A stretch of DNA of 64,000 nucleotides from Phaeosaccion multiseriatum (taxonomy: Eukaryota; Protista; Ochrophyta, other classes). Shown here piece after piece: positions 67 through 49,066 of the stretch. Position numbers and translations under genes: made by a program. Within the stretch, counting starts at the first letter, position 1, and every line of letters starts with the position of its first letter. The DNA lies in assembly GCA_965112735.1 (NCBI GenBank), contig OZ218958.1, positions 372,001 through 436,000 on the forward strand. Reading direction: 5' to 3'. The notes beneath the pieces were generated by a model. That model did no database searches. It had not been told where the DNA came from and saw only the letters and a list, made by a program, of their open reading frames with translations.

Positions 67-3000
67 GCGTGTGTGTACAATATGTGTGTGTCCTCTGTCG
101 GTCGGTTGCGGAGGTTGGACTGTGCTTTTTCTCTATCGCCGTCGCAGCGCGGCCGGGGAAGGAGTGAGTCATGCTCCAATTTCGTTTCGCAGAAGATACC
201 GCAACCCAGCCATAAGTACCCACATGTGCGGGGCTCTTTTTAATCTCCAATGGCTCTGCTGCTCTGCTGCTCTTTTGCTCTTTTGCTCTCGCTTCTCCCC
301 AAACCGTATCCAAACACGTGTACTTATATGTGTACTTACGTATGACAGGGGGCGCACACGGATGACATCATCTCCATGGCCATGCACCCCTCGGGGCGGA
401 TTGTCGCCACGGGAGAAGTCGGCAAAGCACCCAAGATTGTGCTGTGGGACACAGACACGTGCGAGAGTCTCGGCGTGCTGCAGGGCTTCCACAAGAGAGG
501 GGTGTGTCTGCTGGCCTTCAACGAGGCGGGCGATTACCTGGTCAGTATTGGGCTGGACGACTCCCACTCGATGGCGATTTATCATTGGCAGCAGCGCAGA
601 TTGGTCACTGTCTGTAGTACAGACAAAGGCAAGGTGCTCGGGCTTTGCTCTCTCCCCCCTCCTGGCCGTCTTGGAACGCCGCCAGCAAGGGGGAGGGGGC
701 CCAGCAGCGGCGCAAGCGCTACTAGCACAGGCCGCTTCGTGACGTGTGGTAAAAACCACATGAAGTTTTGGGACTTGTCCGGACAGAATCTCAAGTGTCA
801 AAAAGCGGTGTGGGGGAGGGGGAAGAGTAAGAGGGGGGCGACGAAACGAGCGTCCACCGGCGGAGGGAAAGGCTGCCATCGTCAGACGACTGTGGTGGTG
901 GTGTGCTTCATGGGCGAAGCATGGTCTGGCGGACTGGACGGGTCCCTGGTGGAGTGGAAAGGGCACCGCGCTGTGGGGCACGTGGATACAGAGAACATTC
1001 ATCGAGGCGTCACCATCAATGCCCTCAGCGCCACAGCCGACGGGGGCGAAGGGCCGTTCTTGGTGTCAGGAGACAAAGCCGGGCTGGTGGTGGTATGGCA
1101 GTATGGGGAGGAGCACGGCAGCGTGGTGCCAAAGTTTGTGGCTCACTCTCGCCAATTCTCGCCCTCTCCACCTCCGAGACCTGGGGCCCGCAGTGGGCAG
1201 CTTCGAAACGCAATCAGAGCGGTTCACCTGCGCAACGGATCCGTGCTCGTTGGCACGCAAGGAAGTGAGATTTACGAGATTCTCGTGGACAACATGGAGG
1301 AGTACCATGAACGCGCGGACTACTACCACTACCACGACGACGACATCGCAGAGGACGCAGAGCTGCCCTCCTCGTCCTCGTCCTCCTCCTCCTCCTCCTC
1401 CTCCTACTCGGGCCGGCCCTTCAAAGGTGGAGCAAGGGGAAGCATCGAAGCCCAGCAGATTATGGGGGGGCATTTCAAGGGCGAGGTGTGGGGCTTGGCG
1501 GTTCATCCCTCCACCAACGAGTTCGCCACCGCCGGAGACGACGCTACTGTTCGGCGATGGAGCCTGGGGAGTGGTGGTGGTGGTGGTGGAGGAGGAGGAG
1601 GGGGCGCTGGCTCTGTATCGCCAACTCGTGCTGCTAGTGCGGAGGCTGCTGCTGCTGCTACTGGTGGTGCCAGGACGGGGGCCTCTTCCTTTGGCTGGCC
1701 CAGTAGCAGGGGCGTGGGCAATACCATGGGGCAGCTTGCTTGTGTCTCGCTCCATACCAAGGCTCGTGCGGTCGCATACTCGGCCAATGGAGCGCACCTC
1801 GCTGTGGCTCTGAGCAGTGGAAACGTGCTCATCCTCCTGAGCTCCCTCGAGGGCGGTACAGAGGAGGGCCCTGACGGCGCCGTTCGGGAGTACCTGGACG
1901 GGGTGGTGGCACAGCTGAAGGAGCCCTCACAGTGGGCCCAAGAGCTCAAGTACTCGAAGGACGGCAGCACGCTTGCTGTGGGTAGTCACGACGGCAAGAT
2001 TTACATTTACGACGCTCGGATGGGCCAGGCCTACTACAAGCTTCGAGGGGTGTGCCGTGGCCACACGAGCTACATTACGCATCTCGACTTTGGGGTCAAA
2101 CCTCCTGTGTTGGTGTCCGCAGAGACGCCTCTAGAGGCTACGATGAAACCGGCGAAACCGTACGAGACGGAGGAGGGAGGGGTCGTCCGCAGCACCACCG
2201 ACGACGAGAATTTGTGGATGCAAAGCAATAGCGGGTCGTATGAACTTCTTTTTCACAACGTGTTCACCTGCCGACACGTGACAAGCGCCACGGAGCTGAG
2301 AGACGTTGAGTGGGAGACGTGGACTTGCACGCTGGGGTGGCCGGTACAAGGTGAGCGTGAGAGCGAATGGCAGCCAGCTGTGTGTGTGGTCGGTACTTTG
2401 TTCTCTCCATTCTGTGGTAGGGTGGAGTGGATGAGCGGGTGACAGAGGCATAGAGGTGTTTGATGGCGCAATCAACACCAGTCGTGTGGGCACCTCGCTA
2501 CCCACCCACAGTTTCAGTTTCAGTTTCAGTTTGTTAGCCCCTGCCCACCGGGGTGGCGGGTGGTGGTCGCTCCTGAGCACGCCCCGCGGGGGGAGACGGC
2601 AATACCCACCCACCCAAGCATTCCCACTCGCCCCTTTCTTCATCTTCCCCTTCACCCACCAGGCATCTGGCCCGCCAGTGCGGATGGCACAGACATCAAC
2701 GCGGTGGATCGGAGTCACTCTTACGAGGACGTGCCCGTGGTGGCGTGTGCTGACGACTTTGGCCGAGTGCGACTCTTCAACTACCCGTGCACAGAGGCCG
2801 GATCAGCGGACAAGAGCTACGTGGGGCACAGCAGTCACGTGACCAACGTTCGCTTCAGTCAGGACGACGCCTTCTTGATGAGCACGGGAGGAAACGACCG
2901 CTGTGTATTTGTGTGGCGCACGGACTGCCAGGAGGAAGCACGGGAGAGAAAGGCCGCGCTGGACCGATCCGGCACCACAAAACTGTCACTGTCGAGTGGG

Positions 3001-5307
3001 TGCGGGGCGGACTATTCCGCACAGGACGAGGCCTTCTCCGGCGGCGGCGGCGGCGGCGGCATCGGTACAGGGGCCATGGAAAGGAAGAGGGGCGGTAGGA
3101 GTGGAGAGGAGGGGGCACTCGAAGCGAACTCGAACCCGAACTCGAGCGCTCTGCTGGACAGCAGCGGCACAGCTGACGCGCTGCTGCTGCTCGGCCTGGA
3201 CGAAGAGCTTACACTGGGCAGTAGACAAGCTGCGGCGGAGGGGCGGGCCCTGGCTGTAGGCACGCGGGGCGGTGGGGATGAATTCATGGCGGTAAAGCCA
3301 TGGCTAGGGGCCATTCGAGAGCCCTCCCGCTGGAAGGAGTCGCCGGGGCAGAGCGACGCGCCGGCCGCAGAGCTGGCACTGCACTTTGTGCACGGCTATC
3401 AGGCCCAGGAGTGCCGAAACAATCTGTCGTTTGGGGACAACACCAACGAGGTGGTGTTCCATTCAGCAGGGGTGGGCGTGGTCCACGATGTCAAGCACCA
3501 CAAGCAGATGTTCAACACGCACCACGGGGATGACATTATCAGCCTGGCGGTGCACCCCCAGGGGCATACGGTGGCGACGGGGGCGCTAGGCAAGTCGCCC
3601 GAGATTGTGCTGTGGGACGCCAAGAGCGGTGCCACCTTGCAAGTGATTCGAGGCTTCCACAAGAGAGGCGTTACCCACTTGGCCTTCTCGGGCAGCGGTG
3701 CTCTGCTGGCTAGCGTGGGCCTGGACGATGACCACAGTGTCGCCGTGTACAGTGTGGAGGACGGGGTACTCATGGCTTCGGGGAAGGGGGACCGGAATAA
3801 GGTACTGTGTTTGGCCATGCGAGGTGAGAGGGAGTTGGTGACATGCGGCAGACGGCACGTCAAGTTTTGGGTCAACAAGTCGGGCAGCAACCGCATGGGG
3901 GAGATGCAGAGCAAGAAGGGGCTCTTCGGCAAGTTCAAGAGCCAGGCAGGCCAGCCGGGGAACACCACGGCGGTGTGCGCGGCCTATCTGGGGACAGATG
4001 TGGTGACGGGGCAGGCGGACGGTAGCCTCTACCTATGGAAGGGGCGCAATTGCAGCGGTGTGAGGTACGCACACAAGGGCGCCGTGAATGGCATGTACGC
4101 CTTCCGCCATGGAAAGCCTGGCCTCATCACAGGGGGGCGCGACGGCAAGGTGCTCCTCTGGGACGGCAGCCTCACCCAAACACACGTGATTGACCTCACG
4201 CTGGAGGCACCCGAGGTCCGCCCTACGCTTGCCGATGTGCGCAGTGTGTGCTTTATGCACGGCAAGGCGCTTGTGGGCACTCTGGGCAGTGAGGTGTACA
4301 TCATCGACGTGTCCGTCAAGAGCGTGGTGAAGCTGCTCGAGGGCCACAGCAGAGGCGAGCTATGGGGCTTGAGCACACACCCCACAGTGCAGCAGGTGGC
4401 CACTGTCGGGGACGAGGGCCTTGTGCGCGTGTGGGACGCCTTGTCGAGAGAGATGGTGCATCGCACAGATGTGCAGGGCAAGGCCCGAGCAGTGGCGTAC
4501 TCGCCCGACGGCCAGGCACTCGCAGTGGGGCTGTACAGCGGCCGCGTTATGGTGTGGTTGGAGGATCTCAGCGCGGTCAAGGCGGACGAGCCCGTGGCGA
4601 AGGATTGGATTGAGGCGCTGGCCTACAGCCCGGACGGCAAGACGCTCGCCGTTGGGAGTCACGACAACTGCATCTACCTCCTCGACACGGCGGCGTACCA
4701 TCGCCGCTCAGTGTGCCGCGGCCACAGTAGCTACATTACGCATCTGGACTGGAGCGTCGACTCCCGCCATCTCCAGAGTACTTGCGGGGCCTACGAGCTG
4801 CTCTTCTGGGATACGAGCACGGGCAGGCAGCTCAAGAGCGCGAGCGCTCTCCGCGACGTCAATTGGTCCACGTGGACCTGCACCTTCGGCTGGCCCGTCC
4901 AAGGTAAGCGGTGGTGGTGGCGGGGGTGGGAAACATGATGCATGCACACGACATTTATCCCCTGACATCCAGCCTCTAACAACCCCCCCGCTTCTAATTT
5001 CCACTGCCACTCCTAATGTTCGCTGTGAGCAGGTATTTGGCCCGACTTCTCCGACGGCACGGATGTCAACTCGGTAGCGCGGGCGTCTGGAGCGCAGGGT
5101 CTTCTCGCCACCGGCGACGACTTTGGCGAAGTGAAGTTGTTCAAGTACCCCTGTCCACACGCCAAGGCCAGGTTCAAGGCCTACAGGGCTCACTCCAGCC
5201 ACGTGAGCAGGGTCATGTTCTCGGTGGGGAACCGCTTCCTCTTTACCACGGGTGGAAACGACCGAGCGCTGCTGCAGTGGGTGGTGCAGAATCGACCCCT
5301 GACGTGA
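1..5307 (+). CDS. Echinoderm microtubule-associated protein-like (EML5/6-type) HELP-WD40 protein, 3' part; exons <1-25, 349-2350, 2663-4903, 5033-5307
   Basis: Repeated EML modules (HTDDIISMAMHP..ATGE, TWTCTLGWPVQGIW, DGTDINAVDRS, DDFGRVRLFNYP, GHSSHVTNVRF, L.FVHGY...CRNNL). GT-AG introns at 26-348, 2351-2662 and 4904-5032 join the ORFs in frame. Stop TGA at 5305-5307. Confidence 0.92.
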
Positions 5308-9518: not shown

Positions 9519-9789
9519 AGGGGGGGGAGGGAGAGGAGGAGGGAAAAAAAAAAAAAAAATGGGTCCTCGATTCTCGCGTGTTGGTGCTTCAAACGATCTT
9601 CAAACAGAGGTTGACAACGGCATTACGGGAAGCGAAGCGCGGATCCGTGGGGAGCTTTGAACAATACGCAGCACTTGAGCCATCTTCCCGCACCTCAACT
9701 TCTCCTCTACAGCCGCTGACTGCTTTCAACCATCATCGCTCTCAGTACCGGGCCCCCGCCTTTTTTCTTTCCCCCGAAGGGGAAGCACA

Positions 9790-12700
9790 ATGAAACGACG
9801 CTGTGAGGAGCGCCGGCAGCAAGGAGAGGCGGGAGAGGCGGGGAGGATGTTATCTCACAGTCCCCAGCAGGAGGGCGCCGCTGGTCCCTCTACTGCGTGC
9901 ACCCTCCAAGCTGGGGACAGCAGGAGCCAGACTGTAGCGGCCTGGGGTGTTCTCAATACCGTACTGCGGAGCAAGGAACTTTGGGTGTCAGCCGGGCCCT
10001 CGACGAGGTGACATCACGCACTCTCGTGCTGAATATCGCTGCACCCGCCCCTGTCCAACAGCATATGCTCGGTCTCCTCCGGTGGCAGCAGCGGGAAGAG
10101 AAGAAGCACACTGGTGCATCACCATCTCTAGCGGCAGAGGTGGGGGCCATTGGCAGCGGAGAGGGAGTGGGAGGCCTTGGGGGAGGCAAACCGAGACGCA
10201 CGTTCGGCGTTGCAGCTGTGCGCCTGGGCCCCAGCAGGAGCTACTTTCATGCTCTCGATCTGGCCTCCGCTGACGAAGCTCTGGTCACGAAGGCGTTGGC
10301 GCTATTACCGGCATCGGTCAAGCGTGTGTGTTTCTCGGACCATTTCAACCAAGCTAACATCGCCTTGCCAAGAACCGTGGAGGAGATGCAGATGGGGCGG
10401 GACTTCAACCTCCCTCTGGATCTCCCGGCTTCGCTGAAAAAGATCGCATTTGGCGAAAGGTTCAATCAGCACGTGGTCCTTCCTTGCGGTGTGGAGGAGG
10501 TGCAGATGGGGTGTTACTTCAACCTCCCTCTGGATCTCCCGGCTTCGCTGAAGAAGATCACATTTGGCGAAAGGTTCAATCAGCACGTGGTCCTTCCTTG
10601 CGGTGTGGAGGAGGTGCAGATGGGTAGGGACTTTAACCTCCCTCTGGATCTCCCCGCTTCGCTGAAGAAGATCAAGTTTATTGACTTCTCGAAGTTCAAT
10701 CAGCACGTGGTCCTTCCTTGCGGTGTGGAGAAGGTGAATACGGGGCATGACTTTAACCTCCCTTTGGCCCTACCTGCTTCGCTGAAGACGATCATATTTG
10801 GCGGAAGGTTCAATCAGCCCGTGGTCCTTCCTTGCGGTGTGGAGGAGGTGTGGATGTGGCGGGACTATAACCTCCCTCTGGATCTCCCGGCTTCGCTGAA
10901 GAAGATCACATTTAGCGGAAGGTTCAATCAGCACGTGGTCCTTCCTTGCGGTGTGGAGGAGGTGCAGATGGGCGGGACTTCAACCTCCCTCTGGATCTCC
11001 CGGCTTCGCTGAAGAAGATCACATTTGGCGAAAGGTTCAATCAGCACGTGGTCCTTCCTTGCGGTGTGGAGGAGGTGCAGATGGGTAGGGACTTTAACCT
11101 CCCTCTGGATCTCCCCGCTTCGCTGAAGAAGATCAAGTTTGATGACTTCTCGAAGTTCAATCAGCACGTGGTCCTTCCTTGCGGTGTGGAGGAGGTGGAC
11201 ATGGGGTATTATTTTAACCTCCCTTTGGAGCTGCCTGCCTCGCTGAAGAAGATCACATTTAGCGAAGACTTCAATCAGCACGTGGTCCTTCCTTGCGGTG
11301 TGGAGGAGGTGCAGATGGGGTTCGACTTCGACCTCCCTCTGGAGCTGCCTGCCTCGCTCAAGAAGATCACATTTGGCGGTTGCTTCGATCAGCACGTGGT
11401 CCTTCCTTGTGGTGTGGAGGAGGTGGACATGGGCGAGCACTTCAACCTCCCTCTGGATCTCCCTGCTTCGCTGAAGAAGATCAGATTTCGCGGACTGTTT
11501 AATCAGCACTTGGTCCTTCCTTGCGGTGTGGAGGAGGTGCAGATGGGGTATGACTTTAACGTCCCTCTGGATCTTCCCGTTTCGCTGAAGAAGATCAGAT
11601 TTGGCGATGGCTTCAATCAGCACGTGGTACTTCCTTGCGGTGTGGAGGAGGTGGATATGGGTAGGGACTTTAACCTCCCTTTGGAGCTGCCTGCCTCGCT
11701 GAAGAAGATCACATTTGGCTTTCGCTTCAACCTCCCTGTGGAGCTGCCTGCCTCGCTGAAGATGATCACATTTGGCGGTTGCTTCGATCAGCACGTGGTC
11801 CTTCCTTGTGGTGTGGAGGAGGTGGACATGGGCGAGCACTTCAACCTCCCTCTGGATCTCCCTGCTTCGCTGAAGAAGATCAGATTTCGCGGACTGTTTA
11901 ATCAGCACTTGGTCCTTCCTTGCGGTGTGGAGGAGGTGCAGATGGGGTATGACTTTAACGTCCCTCTGGATCTTCCCGCTTCGCTGAAGAAGATCAGATT
12001 TGGCGATGGCTTCAATCAGCACGTGGTACTTCCTTGCGGTGTGGAGGAGGTGGATATGGGTAGGGACTTTAACCTCCCTTTGGAGCTGCCTGCCTCGCTG
12101 AAGAAGATCACATTTGGCTTTCGCTTCAACCTCCCTGTGGAGCTGCCTGCCTCGCTGAAGATGATCACATTTGGCGGTTGCTTCGATCAGCACGTGGTCC
12201 TTCCTTGTGGTGTGGAGGAGGTGGACATGGGCGAGCACTTCAACCTCCCTCTGGATCTCCCTGCTTCGCTGAAGAAGATCAGATTTCGCGGACTGTTTAA
12301 TCAGCACTTGGTCCTTCCTTGCGGTGTGGAGGAGGTGCAGATGGGGTATGACTTTAACGTCCCTCTGGATCTTCCCGCTTCGCTGAAGAAGATCAGATTT
12401 GGCGATGGCTTCAATCAGCACGTGGTACTTCCTTGCGGTGTGGAGGAGGTGGATATGGGTAGGGACTTTAACCTCCCTCTGGATCTTCCCCCTTCACTGA
12501 AGAAGATCACATTTGGCGCAAGGTTCAATCAGCACGTGGTCCTTCCTTGCGGTGTGGACGAGGTGGAGATGGGTAGGGACTTTAACCTGCCTTTGGCCCT
12601 GCCTGCTTCGCTCCTGCTTCTCAAGCTTGGAAGGAACAACACCTGCCCCACGGAGAATCTACCTGCTCGCCTCATGGTGCTAACCGTTGGTGAGAACTAT

Positions 12701-12814
12701 CCTCTGCCTGCTGATCTACCTGAGGGGCTTTACATAAACGAGTACGAGGACGAGGACGAGGGGGGGGAGGGAGAGGAGGAAGAAGAAGATGGTGATGAAC
12801 CCGGCGATTATTGA
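9790..12814 (+). CDS. Intronless FNIP/IP22-type leucine-rich-repeat protein with F-box-like N-terminus and acidic tail; two single-G frameshifts (~9984, ~10971)
   Basis: About 39 19-aa repeats alternating FNQHVVLPCGVEEVxMGxx and FNLPLDLPASLKKIxFxxx. Restoring one G at each shift gives one ORF whose N- and C-caps align with 39188-41128. Confidence 0.85.
10343..12610 (+). repeat. Coding tandem array: 57-bp half-units / 114-bp units, with a 399-bp higher-order repeat present nearly three times (~11370-12480)
   Basis: tttggcggttgcttcgatcagcacg recurs at ~11372, ~11771 and ~12170. Confidence 0.95.
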
Positions 12815-14044
12815 GCTCTAGGAGACAGACGTGTCCTTTGCAGCTAGGACAGCGCAGCGCTCCTCCGAGGAAAGAGAGGAGGGGGGGGGGCATGCAGCAC
12901 ACTGTGGACATCGTGGCTCGAGGCGAGTCATCGGAAGCTCTGGACGCTCCATTCACTACTTGACGACGGGCCTTGCCGTGGGACGGCCACTGCAGACATC
13001 GCTATCGCAGTGAGAGAGAGAGGTGCTGCCGGGCCTCTGAGAGCGTACCTACACCTCCAGGCTGTCGCACTCCCGCACTCTCGCTGCGCGATGGAAGGAA
13101 CATTCTCGCCGCTCATCATACCTCATCTCTCTTGAAGGCAGCCTGGGGATCATGCTCCATTCTTGTCCCGAGAGAGAGAGAGAGTGTGTGTGTGTGTGAG
13201 TGTCGGCAGCTACATGGCACCGCCCGATACGATGATGGGGCCTTGTGATGACTCTGAGCAGAAGGGCAGTCGCGCCACAGCGCACAAGAGTGCGGCGACT
13301 TTCCTTTCCACGCTTCGCAAGTGAGCTTCCTTTGATATAATATGTAATCTTAGCTCTTCTCTTTTTGCCTCATTCCCTTCCCCTCTCCCTCATTCCCTTC
13401 CCGCTCCAGCCTCATCGCCAGCAAGCTGTGGCGAGGCCTTCCTTGCCCGCACTCCTGCAATAAGCGGCATGAAGTGCCTCCTTTAAACCCCTCCCTCCCC
13501 CTCTACACACATAGTAGGAAGGTCGTAAAAGAAAACTTAACATCAATTCCTCTTCAAATCACATGCTACTCCATCCACTCCACCATACCACCAACTCGTC
13601 CACTCCGGACAGAACCTCAGATCAGCTGCCCAGTGTCACCAGTGTCCGTGCCGTGAGTAAGTAGCCTTGCTCCCTCTCCCTCTCTCCCTCTCCCTCTCCC
13701 TGTTAGTTGTCTCCTCCTTGGTCGTTGGAGTGCAGTAAGCAAGCAGCCTTGCTGTCTCACATCTGTCTCTTGTCTCTCATCTCCGCTGGATCTTCATGAG
13801 GTTTCTGAAGAGTCCCTTGACGGTAGGAGTGAGACGTGTCTTGTTGTTCAATTGTCGCCCACCTGTCGGAGAGCCTCGGCAGCTGAAGAGTGAGAGAGAA
13901 GTGGATAGATGGATGGCAGTGGATGGCAGTGGAGCAAGGGTAGAGTGCGGAGTGATGTGAGCGGGTGCCAAGGTCCCGGACTGGGAGACAGAGGGGACAC
14001 ATGCTCAAAGGCAGGTATATATGGGGAGGAGACAGGCATAGATA

Positions 14045-14175
<131 letters not shown>

Positions 14176-16026
14176 ACAGGTAAAATGAAAGTCGTCTTTG
14201 ACACGCAACACGCAGATAGACCACCAACGCATGCATGAACTTACTCGTGGGGTAGGGGTGGATGACGGCGGCGAGCTTTCCAATCCCAATACCATTCTGC
14301 ATCGCCACACTGAGCTTACTAATCAAGTCCCCTGCACTAGCCCCGACAATGGTGGCGCCGAGGAGGGTATCCGAGCCGGCCTTCACGTGCACCTTGACGA
14401 ATCCACTCGTGTCCCCCTCACAGATGGCTCGATCAACGCGAGTTGCTTGGTGTACGTGTCGTACTTGATGCCCTGCGCGTCGAGATCGCGTGGGTACAGG
14501 CGCACGTGTGCGACTTCGGGCTCCGTGTAGGTGGCCCAGGGAATGAGCAGGGAGCTGATAGTGGAGTAGAGTGGGGTGCAGTGGGGGTGTTGGGGTGGGG
14601 GTGGAGGGGAGGGGAAGAAGGAATGGGTGGAGGTGGAGAGGAGTGGAGTGGAAGGGAGTGGAGTGGAGTGGAGTGGAGTGGAGTGGAGGTGGAGGGGAGT
14701 GGAGTGGGGTGGAGTCGGGGTGAGGGTGCGGGTGGAGGGGAGGGGAAGAAGGAATGGGTAGAGGTGGAGAGGAGTGGAGTGGAAGGGAGAGGGGCGCAGG
14801 GGGGGGGGGTAGTGGAGTCGAGGTGGAGTGGAGTGGAGTGGGGTGGAGTGGGGGTGAGGGTGGGGGTGGAGGTGGAGAGGAGTGGAGATGGAGAGGAGGG
14901 GAGAGCGATAGGTCAGCATCTCTCATCCTACAAAGAAGAAGAAGAAAAAGAGAAGCGACAGACCCAATGGATGCGGGGCCGGCCCGCCTGTCACCTCTCC
15001 TTCCACCCGCACCTCCACCCGCTCCCCACCCACTACAAGGGATGCCACACCTCCGCTCCACAGCAAGATAAGATGATGTAAGATGACATGAGACAACATG
15101 AACATACCTGAACTTGCCCTTGCCGAAGAAGAGCGCGTTGCGAATGACGATTCGCGCCATAAAGTCCGACACGTGCGTGAACTGAAACGGTGTGCAGCAG
15201 TCCCCCACCGCGAAAATCGCCTTGTTGGACGTGTGCAGCTGATCGTTCACCTCCACCCCATTGCGAGTGTCATTTGAGGCCAATGCCCTGGACATTGGGT
15301 TTACGTCCTGTAGCAACGAGCAGTGCCTCGGTTTCGAACACCACCTCCTTCTCCTCCTCTCCATCGGATCCGTCCTGTCGGCACGTTACTCTCATGACGT
15401 TAGCGACGGTTGTCATACAGTCTCCACCGGCTGCTCCTTGTTTCCCTACAACTCTCTCCACCTTGTCAAACTTCAAGTAGAAGTTGAGCTTGATGCTGTA
15501 CTTTGAGGAGCTGCTCCTCCACGATGCGAGCGGCGTTTTCGTCCTCCTTGGGCATGATCGTTTGTTGGAGAGGGAGGGAGGGGAGGAAGGGAGGGAGGGG
15601 GAGGTAGAGGGAGGGGTGTGGAGGTGAGAGAGAAGGTGAGAGAGAGAGAGACAGAGAGGGGAAAGAGAGGGGAGGAGGAGAGGGGGAGAGAGAGACATAG
15701 AGAAGAGAGTCTTACCTGGTCAGAGCGCACCAACACGGTTACTTCCGATCCGAAGCGGCGCATTGCTTGGGCAAGCTCCAGACCGATGGGCCCTGGGGGG
15801 GTGTTGGGCGGGTTGGGTTTGGGTTGGATTGGATAGAGGGTTGGGGTGTCAGGGTGGGGACAATGATTGATGGCCCAGGCACAACTAGCAAGAGAAGGGG
15901 AGCAGGGCGAGGCAGGAGAGAAGCGTTGCGCGCTTTGGGGTCAAGCAGAGCAGGAGTAGCAGGGGTAGTAGTGGTAGTAGTAGTAGTAGAAGTAACAGTA
16001 GTAGTACTATAAGAAGTAGCAGCAGT

Positions 16027-38853: not shown

Positions 38854-39187
38854 TATTGCTCCAAGATTCTCTATACGTTCTCCCTTCTCGCTGCTCTCTC
38901 CACCGCCGCGACTACTCTTGGCAAAGAGTCAGGCAGCCATGCTGCCGGCCAGCTGCTTCGAAGTACAAAGCAAGAGAGAGAGAGAAAGTGGTTTCCGAGT
39001 GGACCCTTTTGTAAACACGTACCACCAAAGCCTTCGTTCCTCTATACAAGCGACCCAGTCTGTGTGCAGTTCCGAGTTCCTTCGCTGTGCAGAAAACGAG
39101 AGGTGATTGGCGGGAGGCCGGAGAGCTCAGGAGGGGAGACGGAGAGGAACTTCAAGGAGGGGGGGAGAGAAAGTAAAGGGGAAAGAG

Positions 39188-41034
39188 ATGGAGGGGGGAA
39201 AGAGACGAGCAGCAGCGCAAAACATTCCCTCTTCTAGTGCTTCCATGAGGCACTCAGGGGGGGGCGCTACTGAGGTAGCAGACTGGGATGGAGTGAAGGT
39301 GCTGACCCTCATTGTTGCAAACGTGGGTTCCGTCAAGAGTCTGTGGGGCTTGTGCAGAGAGGTGGATGCAGTCGTGGGGAGGCGACTCCGTCTAAACTGC
39401 CGTATGCCTAAAGCGGTTCAGCAGAGAATACTGAAGATGCTCGAGCACCAGCAGCGGCTTGAGCTTGAGCCATCTGGGGGAGGAGGAGCATCCTCTGCTG
39501 CTGGGGATGGACAAAGACCACGCGTCCAGGAGGCGCGGCGGCGGGCCCAGCAGTGTGGAGAGGGAGGAGGGGAGGTTCCCAGCAAAAGGCATTTTCGGGT
39601 CAGCGCTGTCACACTGGGTGGCAACAAGTATTCCTATCGTCCTTGTGGTGATGATTTACGGGCGGACATTGCCCTTGTCCTTGAAGGGCTGAGAGTGCTC
39701 CCTCCCTCGGTGAAGCACGTTCGCTTGGGAGATGGTTTCAGCTGTCGTGACCTGCGTCTTCCTGACGGGCTGGAGAGTGTACATTTTGGACAAGAGTTTT
39801 CCGGAGATGTCAAGCTTCCGCACACCTTGAGGGAGTTGAGCTTTGATCCTCAGCAGCCCGTATACAATCGTCCTTTGGACCTCCCCCCATCGCTGCGAAA
39901 GATCACGCTTGGGCGCTGCTTTAGCCATGACGTGACTCTTCCCAGCTCTCTGGAAGAGCTAAAGTTCGGCTGGCGGTCTTCCTTCAATCATCCGTTAACC
40001 CTGCCTGCCTCTCTTCGGACTCTGCACCTGGGAGAGAAATACAGTCTGCCCCTATCGGATCTGCCGGACGGGCTGACGGAGCTGAAATTTTCCGAGTTGT
40101 CGAGCTTTAATCATCCGTTGATCCTGCCTGCTTCTCTTCGGACTCTGCACCTGGGACTGTACTACGGGCTTTCCCTATCGGATCTGCCGGACGGGCTGAA
40201 GGAGCTGACCTTTCCCACTGACTCGTGGTTTAATCATCCGTTGATCCTTCCTCCCTCTCTTCGGACTCTGCAGCTGGGGAGGGATTTCGCGCAGCCTTTG
40301 TCGCGACTCCGGGATGGACTTGTGGAGCTCAAGTTCAGCTATTCGTCTTCCTTCAACCATCCGTTAACCCTGCCTGCCTCTCTTCGGACTCTGCACCTGG
40401 GAGAGAACTACACGCTGCCCCTATCGGATCTGCCGGACGGGCTGACGGAGCTGAAATTTCGCGCTTTGTCAAGCTTTAATCATCCGCTGGTGATCCTTCC
40501 TTCCTCTCTTCGGACTCTGGAGCTGGGGAGGGATTTCACGCAGCCGTTGTCGCGACTCCGGGATGGACTTGTGGAGCTCAAGTTCGGCTATGTGTCTTCC
40601 TTCAATCATCCGTTAACCCTGCCTCCCTCTCTTCGGACTCTGCACCTGGGACGGCACTACACGCTGCCCCTATCGGATCTGCCGGACGGGCTCAAGGAGC
40701 TGGTATTTTCCGTTTACTCGAGGTTCAATCATGCGTTATCCCTGCCTGCCTCTCTTCGGACTCTGCACCTGGGAGTGTACTACACACTGCCCCTATCGGA
40801 TCTGCCGGACGGGCTGACGGAGCTGAAATTTCGCGCCTTCTCCAAGTTTAATCATCCGTTGATCCTACCTGCCTCTCTTCGGACTCTGCAGCTGGGGTGG
40901 ATGTACACGCAGCCGCTAGCACATCTACCTGCTGGTCTGGAGCAACTCGTGGTTGGCAACGATGACCAGCTCCCCGCTCAGCTGCCAAGAGGCCTTGAGG
41001 TGGAGTACTACACGGAGGAGAGTGAGATTGATAT

Positions 41035-41076
<42 letters not shown>

Positions 41077-41128
41077 GGAGGAGGGGGAGGAGGAGGAGGA
41101 GGAGGAGGAGGAGGAGGAGTGTTCTTAA
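39188..41128 (+). CDS. Second intronless F-box-like/FNIP-type LRR protein with poly-D/E tail
   Basis: Open frame with eight ~41-aa double repeats FNHPLxLPASLRTLHLGxxYxLPLSDLPDGLxELKFxxxS. Caps are homologous to the 9790 gene. Start could also be ATG 39245. Confidence 0.88.
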
Positions 41129-45801: not shown

Positions 45802-48800
45802 ATGCCCTCACACACCGGCTGAGCTTGCTTGCTGCCTGCTGTAGCTTAGTCCTGCTTGCGACTGCTGGCTGCCCGCCTACGTGAGCGAAGGAACAGCAGG
45901 CTGGCTGGCAGCGTGAGGCATTCCTTTTTAATGGAGAGATAAATGGCAGGCCCAATCTTACTCCCACGCCCTTCCGCACACTTGCCTGCCTGCTGCTCCG
46001 GGACCTCTTCAGCTCGCGTCCGCCGTTGGTGTACAACGGCTTCTCCCTGGAGCAGCAGTGGACTGTGAGGCCCTGTGCTTGGACATCAACCCCAACGAGC
46101 CGTGCTTTGAGGATGATTCTTGCGCTGGTGGCGGTGAGTTGCAGGGTTTATTGAAGACGATGAACTACTCAGTCGATGTGTATACACGCCTTTTTCGATG
46201 TTGCCTGCGCCTGCTGCGATGTATACCTGCGCCTGCCAACCTCCTTGATGTTCCTGCCTCGTGATAATATCGCCCGCCACGGCCGCCTCTTCTCCTTCTC
46301 CTCTTCCTACCCACCAAACGCCTCAGGCCTCGGGTGCAACGCCGCTGGTGTGGACCAGGAGTGCCGCTTCTGCGGTTTCGGCGATTTTGATCCGTGCCCA
46401 GGAGGCGGCTCGACTGTTCCTCCCACGCCTACTCCAGTGGCCGCCGCGCCCACTCAGGTTATTGGCGTGGCTGACTGGTGTCCTCCTCACTCAGTCCGTT
46501 TGTGCTTCCCGTCTCCCTTGCCTTACTTCCTCTCCTCTCTCCTCTCCTCACTCCTCTTGGGTCTCTGAAGGATGCTTAACCCCTCTCCCACTCCCCTGTG
46601 CTCTCCCTATGGCCCCGCCCCGACCCTTGCACCAACGACTGCCGCCCCTACAAAGGTGCCCACCCATGCACGGACCAGCGCTCCAGTCGCCAACGACGAC
46701 AGCTGCCATGAGCGTTGCGTGGCGATCCATGCCGCTAGCACTTGCGTGCTGGACCCGTCGTGCCTCGACTGTGCCAGCGACCATCAAGGGTGTAAGTAGG
46801 ACGCTTGCACCGTGTCCTCCTGTCCTTGTCTCCTCAGCTCCGGCGGAGGAAGAAGCTGCTCACCTGATCCTCCCCCCCCCCCTCCCTCCTGCCAGCCCTT
46901 TACAACACTTCCACCCTCCTCTCTCCTGCTGCTCTCGAATCGCGCCATAGGCCTCGGATGTAACGCTGCTGGTCTGGGCCAGGAGTGCCGCTTCTGCGGT
47001 TTCCAACCTTTCGATCTCTGCCCAGCGGACGACACAACAGTCCCGCCGACGCCTACTCCAGTAACCGTGACCGCCACGACAAGCGCTCCAGTCGCCCCCG
47101 ACGACAGCTGCTATGAGCGTTGCGTGGCGATCCATGCCCCTAGCACTTGCGTGCTGGACCCGTCGTGCCTCGACTGTGCCAGCGACCCTCGCTCTTGTAC
47201 GTAGCTGCATGCATGTAGACTTGTCAACCCTCTCTCTTCTGCCTTGCTCCTATGATATCCTCTCCTCGCTTCATCACCTCAGGCCGAATCTCCTTTCTCC
47301 CTCCTACTCTCCTGCTAACCGTTTACCACACTCCCCCGCTGCTGTTGAATCGCGCCATAGGCATTGGATGCAACGCTGCCGGTCTGGGCCAGGAGTGCCG
47401 CTTCTGCGGTTTCCACCCCTTTGATCCCTGTCCAGCGGACGACACGGCTCCCACAGCTGCCCCGACTGCAGCACCGACAGCTACCCGGACTGCAGCACCG
47501 ACCGCTTCTCCGACTGAAGCACCGACAGCTGCCCCGACTGAAGCACCGACAGCTGCCCGGACTGCAGCACCGACCGCTTCTCCGACTGCCGCACCGACAG
47601 CTGCCTCGACAGCTGCCCCGACTGCGGCACCGAGCGCATCCCCGACTGAAGCACCGACAGCTTCCCCGACTGCTTCCCCGACTGCAGCACCGACCGCCTC
47701 TCCGACAGCTTCCCCGACTGCGGCACCGAGCCCTTCCCCCACTGCAGCACCGAGCGCTTCCCCGATTGCAGCACCGACCGCTTCTCCGACTGCAGCACCG
47801 ACCGCTTCTCCAACTACAGCACCGACCGCTGTCCCGACTGCAGCACCGGCCGCTTCTCCGACTGCAACACCGACAGCTGCCCCGACTGCTGCACCGACCG
47901 CTTCTCCGACTGCAGCACCGACAGCTGTCACGACTGCAGCACCTCACAAGCGTGCCGGCGACGCTTGCGTCGGGGGCAGCGACTTCGGCAGCTTCCGGGC
48001 AGGCTCGTGTGACTCTCAATTATTGTGCATAAACGACGCTTGCACACCCCCGGGCGAAGTCGGCGACACTTGTGAGTTACGGGGGAACATGTTCGGCTTT
48101 GGCCCGGGCACGTGTGACCGCAGTCTGTACTGCGAAAACGACTCTTGCGTGCCGGGTGGCGCTCTCGGCGACGCTTGTAAGGGCAACCCCGTCTTAGGCA
48201 GCACCTGCAACTTCGGCGTCTGCGTTAACGGGGTTTGCAGCCTCCGGGGCCGTATCGGCGACGCTTGTGTTCCTTTCTCCTTCCGAAGCCCCATCGGCCC
48301 GGGCTCATGTGTGCATAAATTATTCTGCATGAACGAGGTGTGCACCCCGCCGGGGGAAATCGGCGACGCTTGTGATCCTGACAGCGGGAGATTCAGCGAG
48401 GGCACGTGTGACTCCAGTCTGTTGTGCGTAAACGGCTCTTGCATCCCCCCGGGCGAAATCGGCGACGCTTGTGAGGTGGATAGCAACACCATCAGCGCGG
48501 GCACGTGTGACTCTCAATTATGGTGCGTGAACGACTCTTGCAACCCACCGGGCGATATCGGCGACGCCTGTGCCTCTGGCATCTTCGGCATCTTCGACAG
48601 CACCTGCAGCTCCGACAACATCTCTACATTATTCTGCGTGAACGGGGTGTGCACCCCCCCGGGCGAAATCGGCGACGCCTGTGCCTCTGGTGTCAAGGAC
48701 AATTATGGTAAGGACAATTTAAGTAGCAGTACCTGCAGCTCCGACAACATCTCTACATTATTCTGCGTGAACGGGGTGTGCACCCCCCCGGGCGAAATCG

Positions 48801-49066
48801 GCGACGCCTGTGCCTCTGGTAGTGAAATCTTCAGCACCAGTACCTCTGATTACACCTTTTCTTATAGCTCTTACAGCGGCCCCTTCATCAGCAGCACCTG
48901 CAGCTCCGACAATTTCTCTACAGTATTATGTGTGAACGGGGTGTGCACCCCCCCGGGCGAAATCGGCGATGCTTGCGAGGTTTATAGCACTAGTTCCTCT
49001 TCTTCGTTTAGCAATACCTGCGAGGAAGGGCTCTCGTGTATGTCCGGCCAGTGCGTGGAACCGTGA
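45802..49066 (+). CDS. Secreted Cys-rich protein: signal peptide, three LGCNAAG..ECRFCGF modules, Pro/Thr/Ala stalk, ten 4-Cys (PGEIGDAC) repeats
   Basis: Exons ~45802-45880, 46013-46133, 46327-46457, ~46612-46791, 46951-47196, 47361-49066. Signal-like HRLSLLAACCSLVLLATAG. The 5' part needs two single-base corrections, and one acceptor lacks AG. Confidence 0.7.
47445..47945 (+). repeat. Coding 12-bp minisatellite (TAAP/TASP/TEAP)n, mucin-like stalk
   Basis: Seen directly in the ORF 47252-49066. Confidence 0.9.

What the first reader, a model, noticed from the sequence alone, without database searches (positions are those of the whole stretch)
9790..12814. F-box-like/FNIP LRR gene with a constant framework and hypervariable codons (VLR/TALE-like variable receptor)
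Seen: about 39 19-aa repeats whose framework DNA (cttccttg(c/t)ggtgtggaggaggtg; tcgctgaagaagatc) is almost invariant. Variation concentrates at the residue before M/F and the 2-3 residues before the next FN. A-type di-residues: RD, CY, HD, YY, FD, EH, YD. B-type endings: GER, IDFSK, GGR, SGR, DDFSK, SED, GGC, RGL, GDG, GFR, GAR. Established: in LxxLxLxx-type LRRs these positions line the concave ligand-binding face, and F-box+FNIP proteins occur in Mimiviridae and amoebae. Inference: a diversifying intracellular recognition receptor, possibly an SCF substrate adaptor whose specificity is set by a repeat code.
Basis: partly seen in the sequence, partly recalled or inferred. Interest (0 to 1): 0.85.

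Follow-up and report, generated by a model that had tools for sequence, protein, structure and literature searches.

The report
FNIP leucine-rich repeat gene, frame-broken
This is one copy, with its reading frame broken twice in this assembly, of a large algal family of FNIP/FGxxFN leucine-rich-repeat proteins; its "hypervariable codons" are the surface positions already known to vary most in this protein family, so it is a recognisable family member rather than a new kind of receptor.

Summary
The repeats are real: 40 half-units, mostly 19 aa, at 10344-12637 (+). They alternate between two types and match Pfam FNIP and the solved CroV588 structure (6NYR, E 6e-60). The listed variable residues and the invariant DNA frameworks are confirmed.

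Four corrections:
1. The gene is not one open frame. It runs frame 1, then 0, then 2, with one base missing in G-runs at 9983-9985 and 10970-10972. This is a recent pseudogene or an assembly error.
2. A 399-bp block repeated three times supplies 21 of the units, so only 23 of the 57-nt units are distinct at the DNA level.
3. The variable codons are positions 5, 8 and 9 of the LxxLxFGxxFN unit. Huyton et al. 2022 already describe these as the most variable in all such proteins, at the concave-face edge, and compare them with VLRs.
4. No F-box was found by any search.

Non-synonymous change is concentrated in the windows (p about 1e-4), but no excess over synonymous change is shown. Identical 45-nt frameworks carry unrelated windows. 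That fits concerted evolution sparing the contact positions.

Nothing supports a TALE-like code or VLR-like assembly. The scan has 28 notes mentioning FNIP in this same genome.

The parts
9790..10011 (+). 5' piece of the gene in frame 1: ATG at 9790, 73 codons, stop at 10009-10011. Its last part (…WGVLNTVLRSKELW) lines up with the start of the family's N-terminal domain.
   Evidence: by-eye register with the paralog at 39107-41128
9983..9985 (+). Frame break 1: a GGG run where homology passes from frame 1 to frame 0. Paralog-like contigs of four public runs carry one more G here.
   Evidence: (table 4: 'put in behind 9982 G')
9986..10343 (+). Rest of the N-terminal domain, in frame 0. It is family-specific (37% identical to the intact paralog, E 3e-21) and has no detectable relative elsewhere. 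No F-box signal.
10344..12637 (+). FNIP/FGxxFN LRR array of 40 half-units (37 of 19 aa, two of 21, one of 20) alternating A and B. Variable codons are 15, 17, 18 and 19 of each half-unit, which are LRR positions 5, 7, 8 and 9.
10970..10972 (+). Frame break 2: the Gly codon of unit 11 is one base short (ATG-GG-CGG where the sibling unit at 10344 has ATG-GGG-CGG). The frame passes from 0 to 2.
11321..12517 (+). A 399-bp block of 7 half-units repeated three times at 98% identity. The odd number of half-units gives one B-B junction per copy (11725/11726 and 12124/12125). This marks recent unequal crossing-over.
12638..12814 (+). Degenerate last units acting as a cap, an acidic Glu/Asp-rich tail, and the stop at 12812-12814. 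The paralog has the same tail type.
   Evidence: pLDDT below 50 for residues 592-611
10928..12421 (-). A 497-codon antisense ORF. It is a by-product of a repeat unit that has no stop codon in that frame, not a gene.
   Evidence: the translation is the repeat read backwards

Best explanation
This is a member of a large, lineage-specific expansion of FGxxFN/FNIP-type leucine-rich-repeat genes. The host is a GC-rich eukaryote, probably an ochrophyte (heterokont) alga.

The protein plan, seen intact in the paralog at 39107-41128, has three parts: an orphan N-terminal domain, a long solenoid of short LRR units, and an acidic tail. Here the units are 19 residues long and alternate between LKKIxFGxxFNQHVVLPCG and VEEVxMGxxFNLPLDLPAS.

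The array grows and is kept uniform by unequal crossing-over and gene conversion in register with the 57-nt half-unit. This is shown by the 399-bp triplication and the roughly 461-bp higher-order period. Core residues (L/V/I, F/M, G, FN, LP) are held by purifying selection.

Positions 5, 8 and 9 sit in and just after the beta-strand, on the concave face and its edge. They are free to vary, or are selected to vary, and presumably form the ligand-contact surface. That is inferred.

The likely function is a cytosolic protein-binding scaffold whose partner is unknown. This particular copy has two 1-nt frame breaks in short G-runs, so it is either freshly inactivated or mis-assembled.
For: Family membership: Pfam FNIP E 5e-32 and 2e-81. 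phmmer to CroV588 6NYR E 5.7e-60 and to CroV539 7ZAL E 5e-17, with each 19-aa unit aligned to one 22-aa unit minus three residues. AF2 model pLDDT 77.8 with one strand per 19 residues. Foldseek top hit 6NYR_A, E 4e-27, TMq 0.75.

Array dynamics: block duplications. Non-synonymous events are concentrated in the windows, p 6e-5 for A units and 2e-4 for B units. One 45-nt A framework haplotype carries 5 different window DNAs, and window divergence is saturated whatever the framework distance.

Family size: about 2,000 short contigs per run lie on the array at >=95% identity, with loose ends that start at the windows. There are 28 scan notes on FNIP in the same genome.

Other: intact paralog with the same plan. 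EML neighbour gene's best named hits are Phaeothamnion 51% and Tribonema 50%. FNIP expansions are known in brown algae: 104 sequences in Ectocarpus and 121 in Saccharina.
Against: The ORF is broken twice, so a function for this copy is not assured. No RNA run was shown to hold it. No ligand or partner is known for any FNIP protein. Selection for diversity is inferred, not shown: window N/S is 0.5 for A units and 2.3 for B units (p 0.2). The near-absence of synonymous change in the A framework (3 events on 9.5 sites, against 5 on 2.1 sites in the A window, p 0.006) is not explained by amino-acid selection alone.
Confidence: 0.72

Rival explanations
1. It is a diversifying, immune-like intracellular recognition receptor. 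Positive selection drives change at positions 5, 8 and 9, while recombination in the invariant frameworks shuffles windows among hundreds of units genome-wide.
For: Window divergence per site is 10.7 times the framework's in A units and 2.8 times in B units. Window dN is 0.58-0.65 against a framework dS of 0.067 in A units. Identical frameworks carry unrelated windows. The contig graph branches at the windows, and new window variants appear in paralogs (table 7). Zambounis 2012 gives a precedent for fast-evolving LRR receptor candidates in brown algae.
Against: Non-synonymous change does not significantly exceed synonymous change inside the windows. B-framework dS of 0.44 is close to window dN. 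The most recent duplicates have 0 window changes and 1 framework change. Units 18 and 25 share a window but differ in the framework. There is no signalling domain, no strain comparison and no expression data, and this copy is frame-broken.
Confidence: 0.2
2. It is an SCF ubiquitin-ligase substrate adaptor. The N-terminal domain is a degenerate F-box that binds SKP1, and the FNIP array selects substrates.
For: F-box plus FNIP fusions are known in Megavirus baoshan, mimiviruses and Dictyostelium. The nearest language-model clusters are giant-virus FNIP proteins, 13-23% of which carry an F-box (a lead only). By eye, a W..VL..I…K.LWG..R motif sits where an F-box would.
Against: No Pfam F-box or F-box-like hit even at E<=10 in either paralog. 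No PDB hit at E<=10. No relative of the domain in 5.8 billion proteins, and none convincing in 1.84 billion representatives, where the single hit has E 6.6e-4. AF2 gives pLDDT below 50 over almost all of the first 150 residues. In this copy the putative motif is split by frame break 1.
Confidence: 0.12
3. Diversification is programmed: either VLR-like somatic assembly from cassettes, or mutagenesis targeted to the window codons.
For: Frameworks and windows are sharply decoupled. Synonymous variation is also raised inside the A windows, p 0.006. That would fit a regional mutational process rather than selection on amino acids.
Against: The germline array is complete and not an incomplete gene flanked by cassettes. 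The youngest duplicates show no window mutations. B units show no rise in synonymous rate in their windows. No read-level heterogeneity was shown; contigs cannot show it. No deaminase or reverse transcriptase was linked to the locus.
Confidence: 0.03
4. This copy is a dead gene: a recently inactivated paralog in a birth-and-death family. Its variable codons then say nothing about a present function.
For: Two independent frame breaks. No RNA holder was found. High turnover is expected in such families.
Against: Apart from the two missing bases there is no further decay: every unit keeps the consensus and each piece stays open. Both breaks sit in G-runs and could instead be assembly errors, and the contigs laid cannot settle this. 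This reading can hold together with the best explanation.
Confidence: 0.45

Closest known systems
FGxxFN/FNIP LRR proteins of Cafeteria roenbergensis virus (CroV588, PDB 6NYR; CroV539, PDB 7ZAL), Huyton et al. 2022 (PMC9525666)
   Same: The LxxLxFGxxFN…LP unit, the FN ladder and near-identical repeats within one protein. Positions 5 and 8-9 are the variable ones, at the concave face and its edge. Sequence E 6e-60 and model TM 0.75 to 6NYR.
   Different: Units are 19 residues, not 22: the ENV segment is missing. There is strict A/B alternation, with MG replacing FG in every second unit. The gene is cellular, from an alga, with an orphan N-terminal domain and an acidic tail. It sits in a host chromosome next to ordinary genes.
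F-box and FNIP repeat proteins of Mimiviridae (e.g. Megavirus baoshan) and Dictyostelium
   Same: An FNIP array downstream of a short N-terminal domain. Large multigene families.
   Different: No F-box could be detected here by any sequence or fold test. Their repeat length is 21-22 residues.
FNIP expansions in brown algae (104 sequences in Ectocarpus, 121 in Saccharina; PMC9525666, PMC4421812)
   Same: Same protein family, expanded in a related algal lineage. The best hits include Pylaiella.
   Different: Best identity outside this genome is only 35%. Most hits have 22-residue spacing and only a few have 19-20.
Ectocarpus LRR-ROCO and NB-ARC-TPR candidate receptors (Zambounis et al. 2012, PMC3341825)
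   Same: Fast birth and death. Repeat shuffling with variation at the exposed LRR positions, in a heterokont alga.
   Different: Those have one exon per repeat and a ROC-COR or NB-ARC signalling domain. This gene is an intronless array with no signalling domain and a different LRR class.
Lamprey VLRs and Xanthomonas TALEs
   Same: A constant repeat scaffold with a few variable residues per repeat. TALE repeats are also near-identical at the DNA level outside the variable codons.
   Different: VLRs are assembled somatically from cassettes, and are secreted or GPI-anchored with Cys-rich caps. TALEs are helical 33-35-aa DNA-binding repeats with a proven one-repeat-one-base code. Neither defining feature is present here.

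Membership tests
FNIP / FGxxFN LRR (Pfam PF05725) | Match to the Pfam FNIP model above its gathering score | tested here: met
   110 and 268 bits against a cut-off of 21, with 6 and 13 matched stretches
FNIP / FGxxFN LRR (Pfam PF05725) | LxxLxFGxxFN motif with conserved FG and FN (Phe spine, shifted Asn ladder) | tested here: met
   B units have FGxxFN. A units have MGxxFN, with Met in place of the first Phe. FN/FD/YN is present in all 40 units, and the register with 6NYR is shown.
FNIP / FGxxFN LRR (Pfam PF05725) | Repeat length of about 22 residues | tested here: not met
   19 residues, aligned to CroV588 with a 3-residue gap per unit. Among the hits, 22 is usual and 19-20 is rare. The published family already includes a 21-residue variant, so this is a length variant and not an exclusion.
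FNIP / FGxxFN LRR (Pfam PF05725) | LRR solenoid fold like CroV588 | tested here: met
   AF2 pLDDT 77.8 with regular strands. Foldseek 6NYR_A E 4e-27, TMq 0.75. This rests on a predicted model only.
F-box proteins (PF00646 / PF12937) | Recognisable F-box motif of about 40-50 aa at the N-terminus | tested here: not met
   No hit at E<=10 in Pfam for the intact paralog's N-terminus or for either piece of this gene. No PDB hit. No convincing relatives of the domain. A very degenerate F-box cannot be excluded.
F-box proteins (PF00646 / PF12937) | Three-helix fold that binds SKP1 | tested here: inconclusive
   The AF2 single-sequence model has pLDDT below 50 over almost all of the first 150 residues. 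SKP1 binding is not testable with these tools.
Variable lymphocyte receptors | An incomplete germline gene completed somatically from flanking LRR cassettes; Cys-rich LRRNT/LRRCT caps; secretion | tested here: not met
   The germline array is complete, with 40 units. There are no Cys-rich caps and no signal peptide by direct reading. Somatic variation was not testable because only contigs were available.
TAL effectors | 33-35-aa helical repeats with a variable di-residue at positions 12/13 that read DNA bases | tested here: not met
   Units are 19-aa beta-strand-containing LRRs, and no TAL Pfam hit was found.
NLR / ROCO LRR receptors | NB-ARC or ROC-COR signalling domain joined to the LRR | tested here: not met
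   FNIP is the only Pfam family above its curated cut-off in both pieces and in the paralog.

The most novel reading that the evidence does not exclude
The alga keeps a germline repertoire of hundreds of FNIP units. Their DNA frameworks are actively homogenised and serve as recombination guides, so short window cassettes (positions 5, 8, 9) are shuffled within and between loci under selection for diversity. This would be an intracellular, possibly antiviral, recognition system analogous to NLR or VLR repertoires but built on the FGxxFN scaffold. The near-absence of synonymous change in the A framework beside saturated windows would be its footprint.
Probability: 0.1. Interest if true: 0.75.

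Novelty: new member of a known kind. Interest (0 to 1): 0.33.

Why it matters
FNIP/FGxxFN proteins are numerous in giant viruses, social amoebae and heterokont algae, and no ligand is known for any of them. A host family whose contact positions are saturated with change while the scaffold DNA is kept identical is a reasonable place to look for a protist recognition or antiviral system. For this single locus the value is modest. It mainly shows that the pattern flagged repeatedly in this genome is the published family-wide pattern plus concerted evolution. It also shows that claims of diversifying selection need a genome-wide, recombination-aware test.

Tried and rejected
(1) Introns as the cause of the frame changes: rejected. 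Homology to sibling repeats and to the paralog runs straight across both breaks, with exactly one base missing.

(2) F-box. All of the following gave nothing usable:
- Pfam at E<=10
- NCBIfam
- PDB phmmer at E<=10
- word-indexed search of the N-terminal domain in 5.8 billion proteins
- exhaustive phmmer in 1.84 billion representatives, one marginal hit at E 6.6e-4
- AF2 of the intact paralog's N-terminus, low confidence

(3) Settling the frame breaks with public reads. Only Logan contigs were available, and these drop rare variants. At 9982 the contigs carry an extra G, but they also differ at 4-7 other nearby sites and have several times the depth of the flanks, so they look like collapsed paralogs. 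Nothing was reported at 10970-10972. Inconclusive.

(4) Expression: no run is marked as RNA.

(5) Fetching paralogs or relatives by framework DNA: 0 exact matches in viral contigs and in metagenome contigs.

(6) Rfam over the whole window: no hit.

(7) The depth summed in read laying was not used as a copy number, as the tool warns.

(8) Targeted hypermutation: not favoured, because the youngest duplicates carry no window changes.
Full report
**What is there**

The window is from a GC-rich eukaryote (55-63% GC). Between 10344 and 12637 on the + strand lie 40 tandem half-units. Thirty-seven are 19 aa, two are 21 aa and the first is 20 aa. They alternate between type A (FNQHVVLPCGVEEVxMGxx) and type B (FNLPLDLPASLKKIxFxxx).

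TRF reports a 114-bp period, a 461-bp higher-order period (2.9 copies, 89% identity) and a 399-bp period (3.0 copies, 98% identity).

Both ORF pieces match Pfam FNIP far above threshold (E 4.6e-32 and 2.3e-81). The core observation is correct.

The ATG at 9790 opens frame 1, which stops at 10009-10011. The N-terminal domain and the first 11 half-units are in frame 0 (9897-11012). The remaining units and the tail are in frame 2 (10946-12814).

At 10970-10972 a Gly codon is one base short: ATG-GG-CGG here, where the sibling unit at 10344 has ATG-GGG-CGG.

At 9983-9985 homology to the intact paralog at 39107-41128 passes from frame 1 (…KELW) to frame 0 (GVSRALDEV…; 37% identity, E 3e-21).

Neither break can be an intron, because the homologous sequence continues without interruption.

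In four public runs the contigs laid over 9982 carry one more G. Those contigs also differ from the window at 4-7 nearby positions and have several times the depth of the flanks, so they look like collapsed paralogs. Logan contigs drop rare variants. No other decay is visible. The copy is therefore either very recently inactivated or mis-assembled at two short G-runs, and I cannot tell which.

**Effective number of repeats**

The 399-bp block contains 7 half-units, so each copy has one B-B junction. It is present three times. Differences between the copies cluster at the block ends. Away from the ends there is a single difference, at 11580 in a framework codon (Val/Ala), and none in a variable codon.

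Among the units of 57 nt, only 10 A units and 13 B units are distinct at the DNA level.

**What the variable codons are**

phmmer against PDB sequences gives CroV588 (6NYR) at E 5.7e-60 and CroV539 (7ZAL) at E 5e-17. Each 19-aa unit aligns to one 22-aa LxxLxFGxxFNQxIxENVLPxx unit, with a 3-residue gap at the ENV segment.

In that register the true units are LKKIxFGxxFNQHVVLPCG and VEEVxMGxxFNLPLDLPAS.

The AF2 model of 10979-12811 (pLDDT 77.8) has one short strand per 19 residues, covering positions 3-6. Its best structural match is 6NYR_A (E 4e-27, TMq 0.75).

Huyton et al. 2022 (PMC9525666) state that:
[quoted passage not shown] - residue 5 is the only variable concave residue;
- the repeats within one protein are almost identical.

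The paper also compares the family with VLRs and notes F-box fusions in Megavirus baoshan.

**Is the variation more than relaxed constraint?**

I counted minimum events among distinct units.

| Region | Non-synonymous events per site | Synonymous events per site | N/S |
|---|---|---|---|
| A window | 1.21 | 2.42 | 0.50 |
| A framework | 0.17 | 0.32 | 0.53 |
| B window | 1.47 | 0.63 | 2.33 |
| B framework | 0.30 | 0.97 | 0.31 |

- Non-synonymous change is strongly concentrated in the windows (p 6e-5 for A, 2e-4 for B).
- Inside the windows non-synonymous change does not significantly exceed synonymous change. For B units p is 0.2.
- The window non-synonymous rate exceeds the framework synonymous rate 3.8-fold in A units (p 0.02), but only 1.5-fold in B units (p 0.2).
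- Pairwise NG86 values agree. Window dN is 0.58 (A) and 0.65 (B). Framework dS is 0.067 (A) and 0.44 (B).

**The more interesting residue**

One 45-nt A framework haplotype, with zero differences, carries five different window DNAs. Pairs such as units 16 and 24 differ at 6 of 12 window bases and 0 of 45 framework bases.

Window divergence is saturated at about 5-6 of 12 nt whatever the framework distance. Per site it is 10.7 times the framework's in A units and 2.8 times in B units.

The A framework also lacks synonymous change (3 events on 9.5 sites), while the A window has 5 events on 2.1 sites (p 0.006). The interleaved B framework has ordinary synonymous variation.

Selection on amino acids alone does not explain this. 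The simplest account is concerted evolution of the frameworks by unequal crossing-over and conversion, with windows that escape or are selected to stay different. Against a window-targeted mutator: the youngest duplicates show no window changes, and units 18 and 25 share a window while differing in the framework.

**Family and context**

The window holds an intact paralog (39107-41128, 673 codons) with the same plan but a different unit consensus (20/21 aa). It varies at the equivalent positions.

About 2,000 short contigs per run lie on the array at >=95% identity. Their loose ends begin at the windows and show further window variants. The scan holds 28 notes on FNIP in the same genome. This is a large family.

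Outside the genome the best protein hit is only 35% identical (Durusdinium). Others come from Pylaiella, dictyostelids and metagenomes. Most hits have 22-residue spacing, and 19-20 is rare.

The neighbouring EML gene is closest to Phaeothamnion and Tribonema (50-51%), which suggests an ochrophyte alga. FNIP expansions are already reported in such algae: 104 sequences in Ectocarpus and 121 in Saccharina, there linked to giant-virus relatives.

The neighbours here are ordinary host genes, namely EML, a pyridine-nucleotide oxidoreductase, and PHD and ankyrin proteins. An endogenous viral island is not indicated.

**F-box**

No test supports an F-box:
- Pfam at E<=10 on the paralog's N-terminus and on both pieces of this gene
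- NCBIfam
- PDB phmmer at E<=10
- a 5.8-billion-protein word search
- an exhaustive 1.84-billion-representative phmmer, one marginal hit at E 6.6e-4
- AF2, with pLDDT below 50 over almost all of the first 150 residues

The language-model neighbours are giant-virus FNIP clusters, a minority of which carry an F-box. The scores are in the range the tool calls a lead only. The domain is an orphan, and a degenerate F-box remains possible at about 0.12.

**Verdict**

This is a real FNIP/FGxxFN LRR gene of a short-unit (19-aa) subtype in an expanded algal family. It is frame-broken in this assembly. Its constant framework with hypervariable codons is the family's published pattern, sharpened by recent tandem duplication and concerted evolution.

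Diversifying selection is plausible but unproven. TALE-like coding, VLR-like assembly and SCF adaptor function are unsupported.

Interest is moderate to low for this locus. The genome-wide family deserves one proper recombination-aware analysis rather than many separate flags.

Noticed in passing
window 39107-41128 (+): An intact 673-codon paralog: the same N-terminal domain (37% identity), FNIP units of 20/21 aa alternating (LPASLRTLHLGxxYx… / LPDGLxELKFxxxSxFNHPLx), and a very long Asp/Glu tail. It varies at the equivalent post-strand positions. Already flagged by the scan as s1-334057.
   Followed up: partly
window 10479-12565 (+), 18 sites: The A framework GGTGTGGAGGAGGTG is G-rich, with four GG runs within 13 nt. 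It sits immediately upstream of each A window on the coding strand. Whether it favours recombination or secondary structure was not tested.
   Followed up: no
window 10344-12637: The units are 19 residues, shorter than the 21-22 reported for FNIP repeats. The AF2 model still gives a regular solenoid resembling the closed CroV588 ring (TMq 0.75).
   Followed up: partly
window 9902-10148: In all four public runs the contigs laid here differ from the window at 4-7 positions and have several-fold higher depth than the exactly matching flanks (9783-9901, 12578-12708). They are probably collapsed paralogs of the N-terminal domain, but a locally mis-polished assembly cannot be excluded.
   Followed up: partly
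window 376-4938 (+): Two adjacent long ORFs encoding EML-type (HELP plus double beta-propeller) microtubule-associated proteins. Best named hits are Phaeothamnion and Tribonema at 50-51%, used here only to place the organism among ochrophyte algae.
   Followed up: partly
window 13757-15364 (-): A pyridine-nucleotide-disulphide oxidoreductase gene, read through as one ORF. It is interrupted by (GTCT)n-type microsatellite and Pro/His/Ser/Thr-rich low-complexity stretches that look like introns.
   Followed up: no
window 47252-49066 (+): A 604-codon ORF with Pfam PT disordered repeats and a weak DUF7107 match. It was flagged separately by the scan (s1-334029).
   Followed up: no
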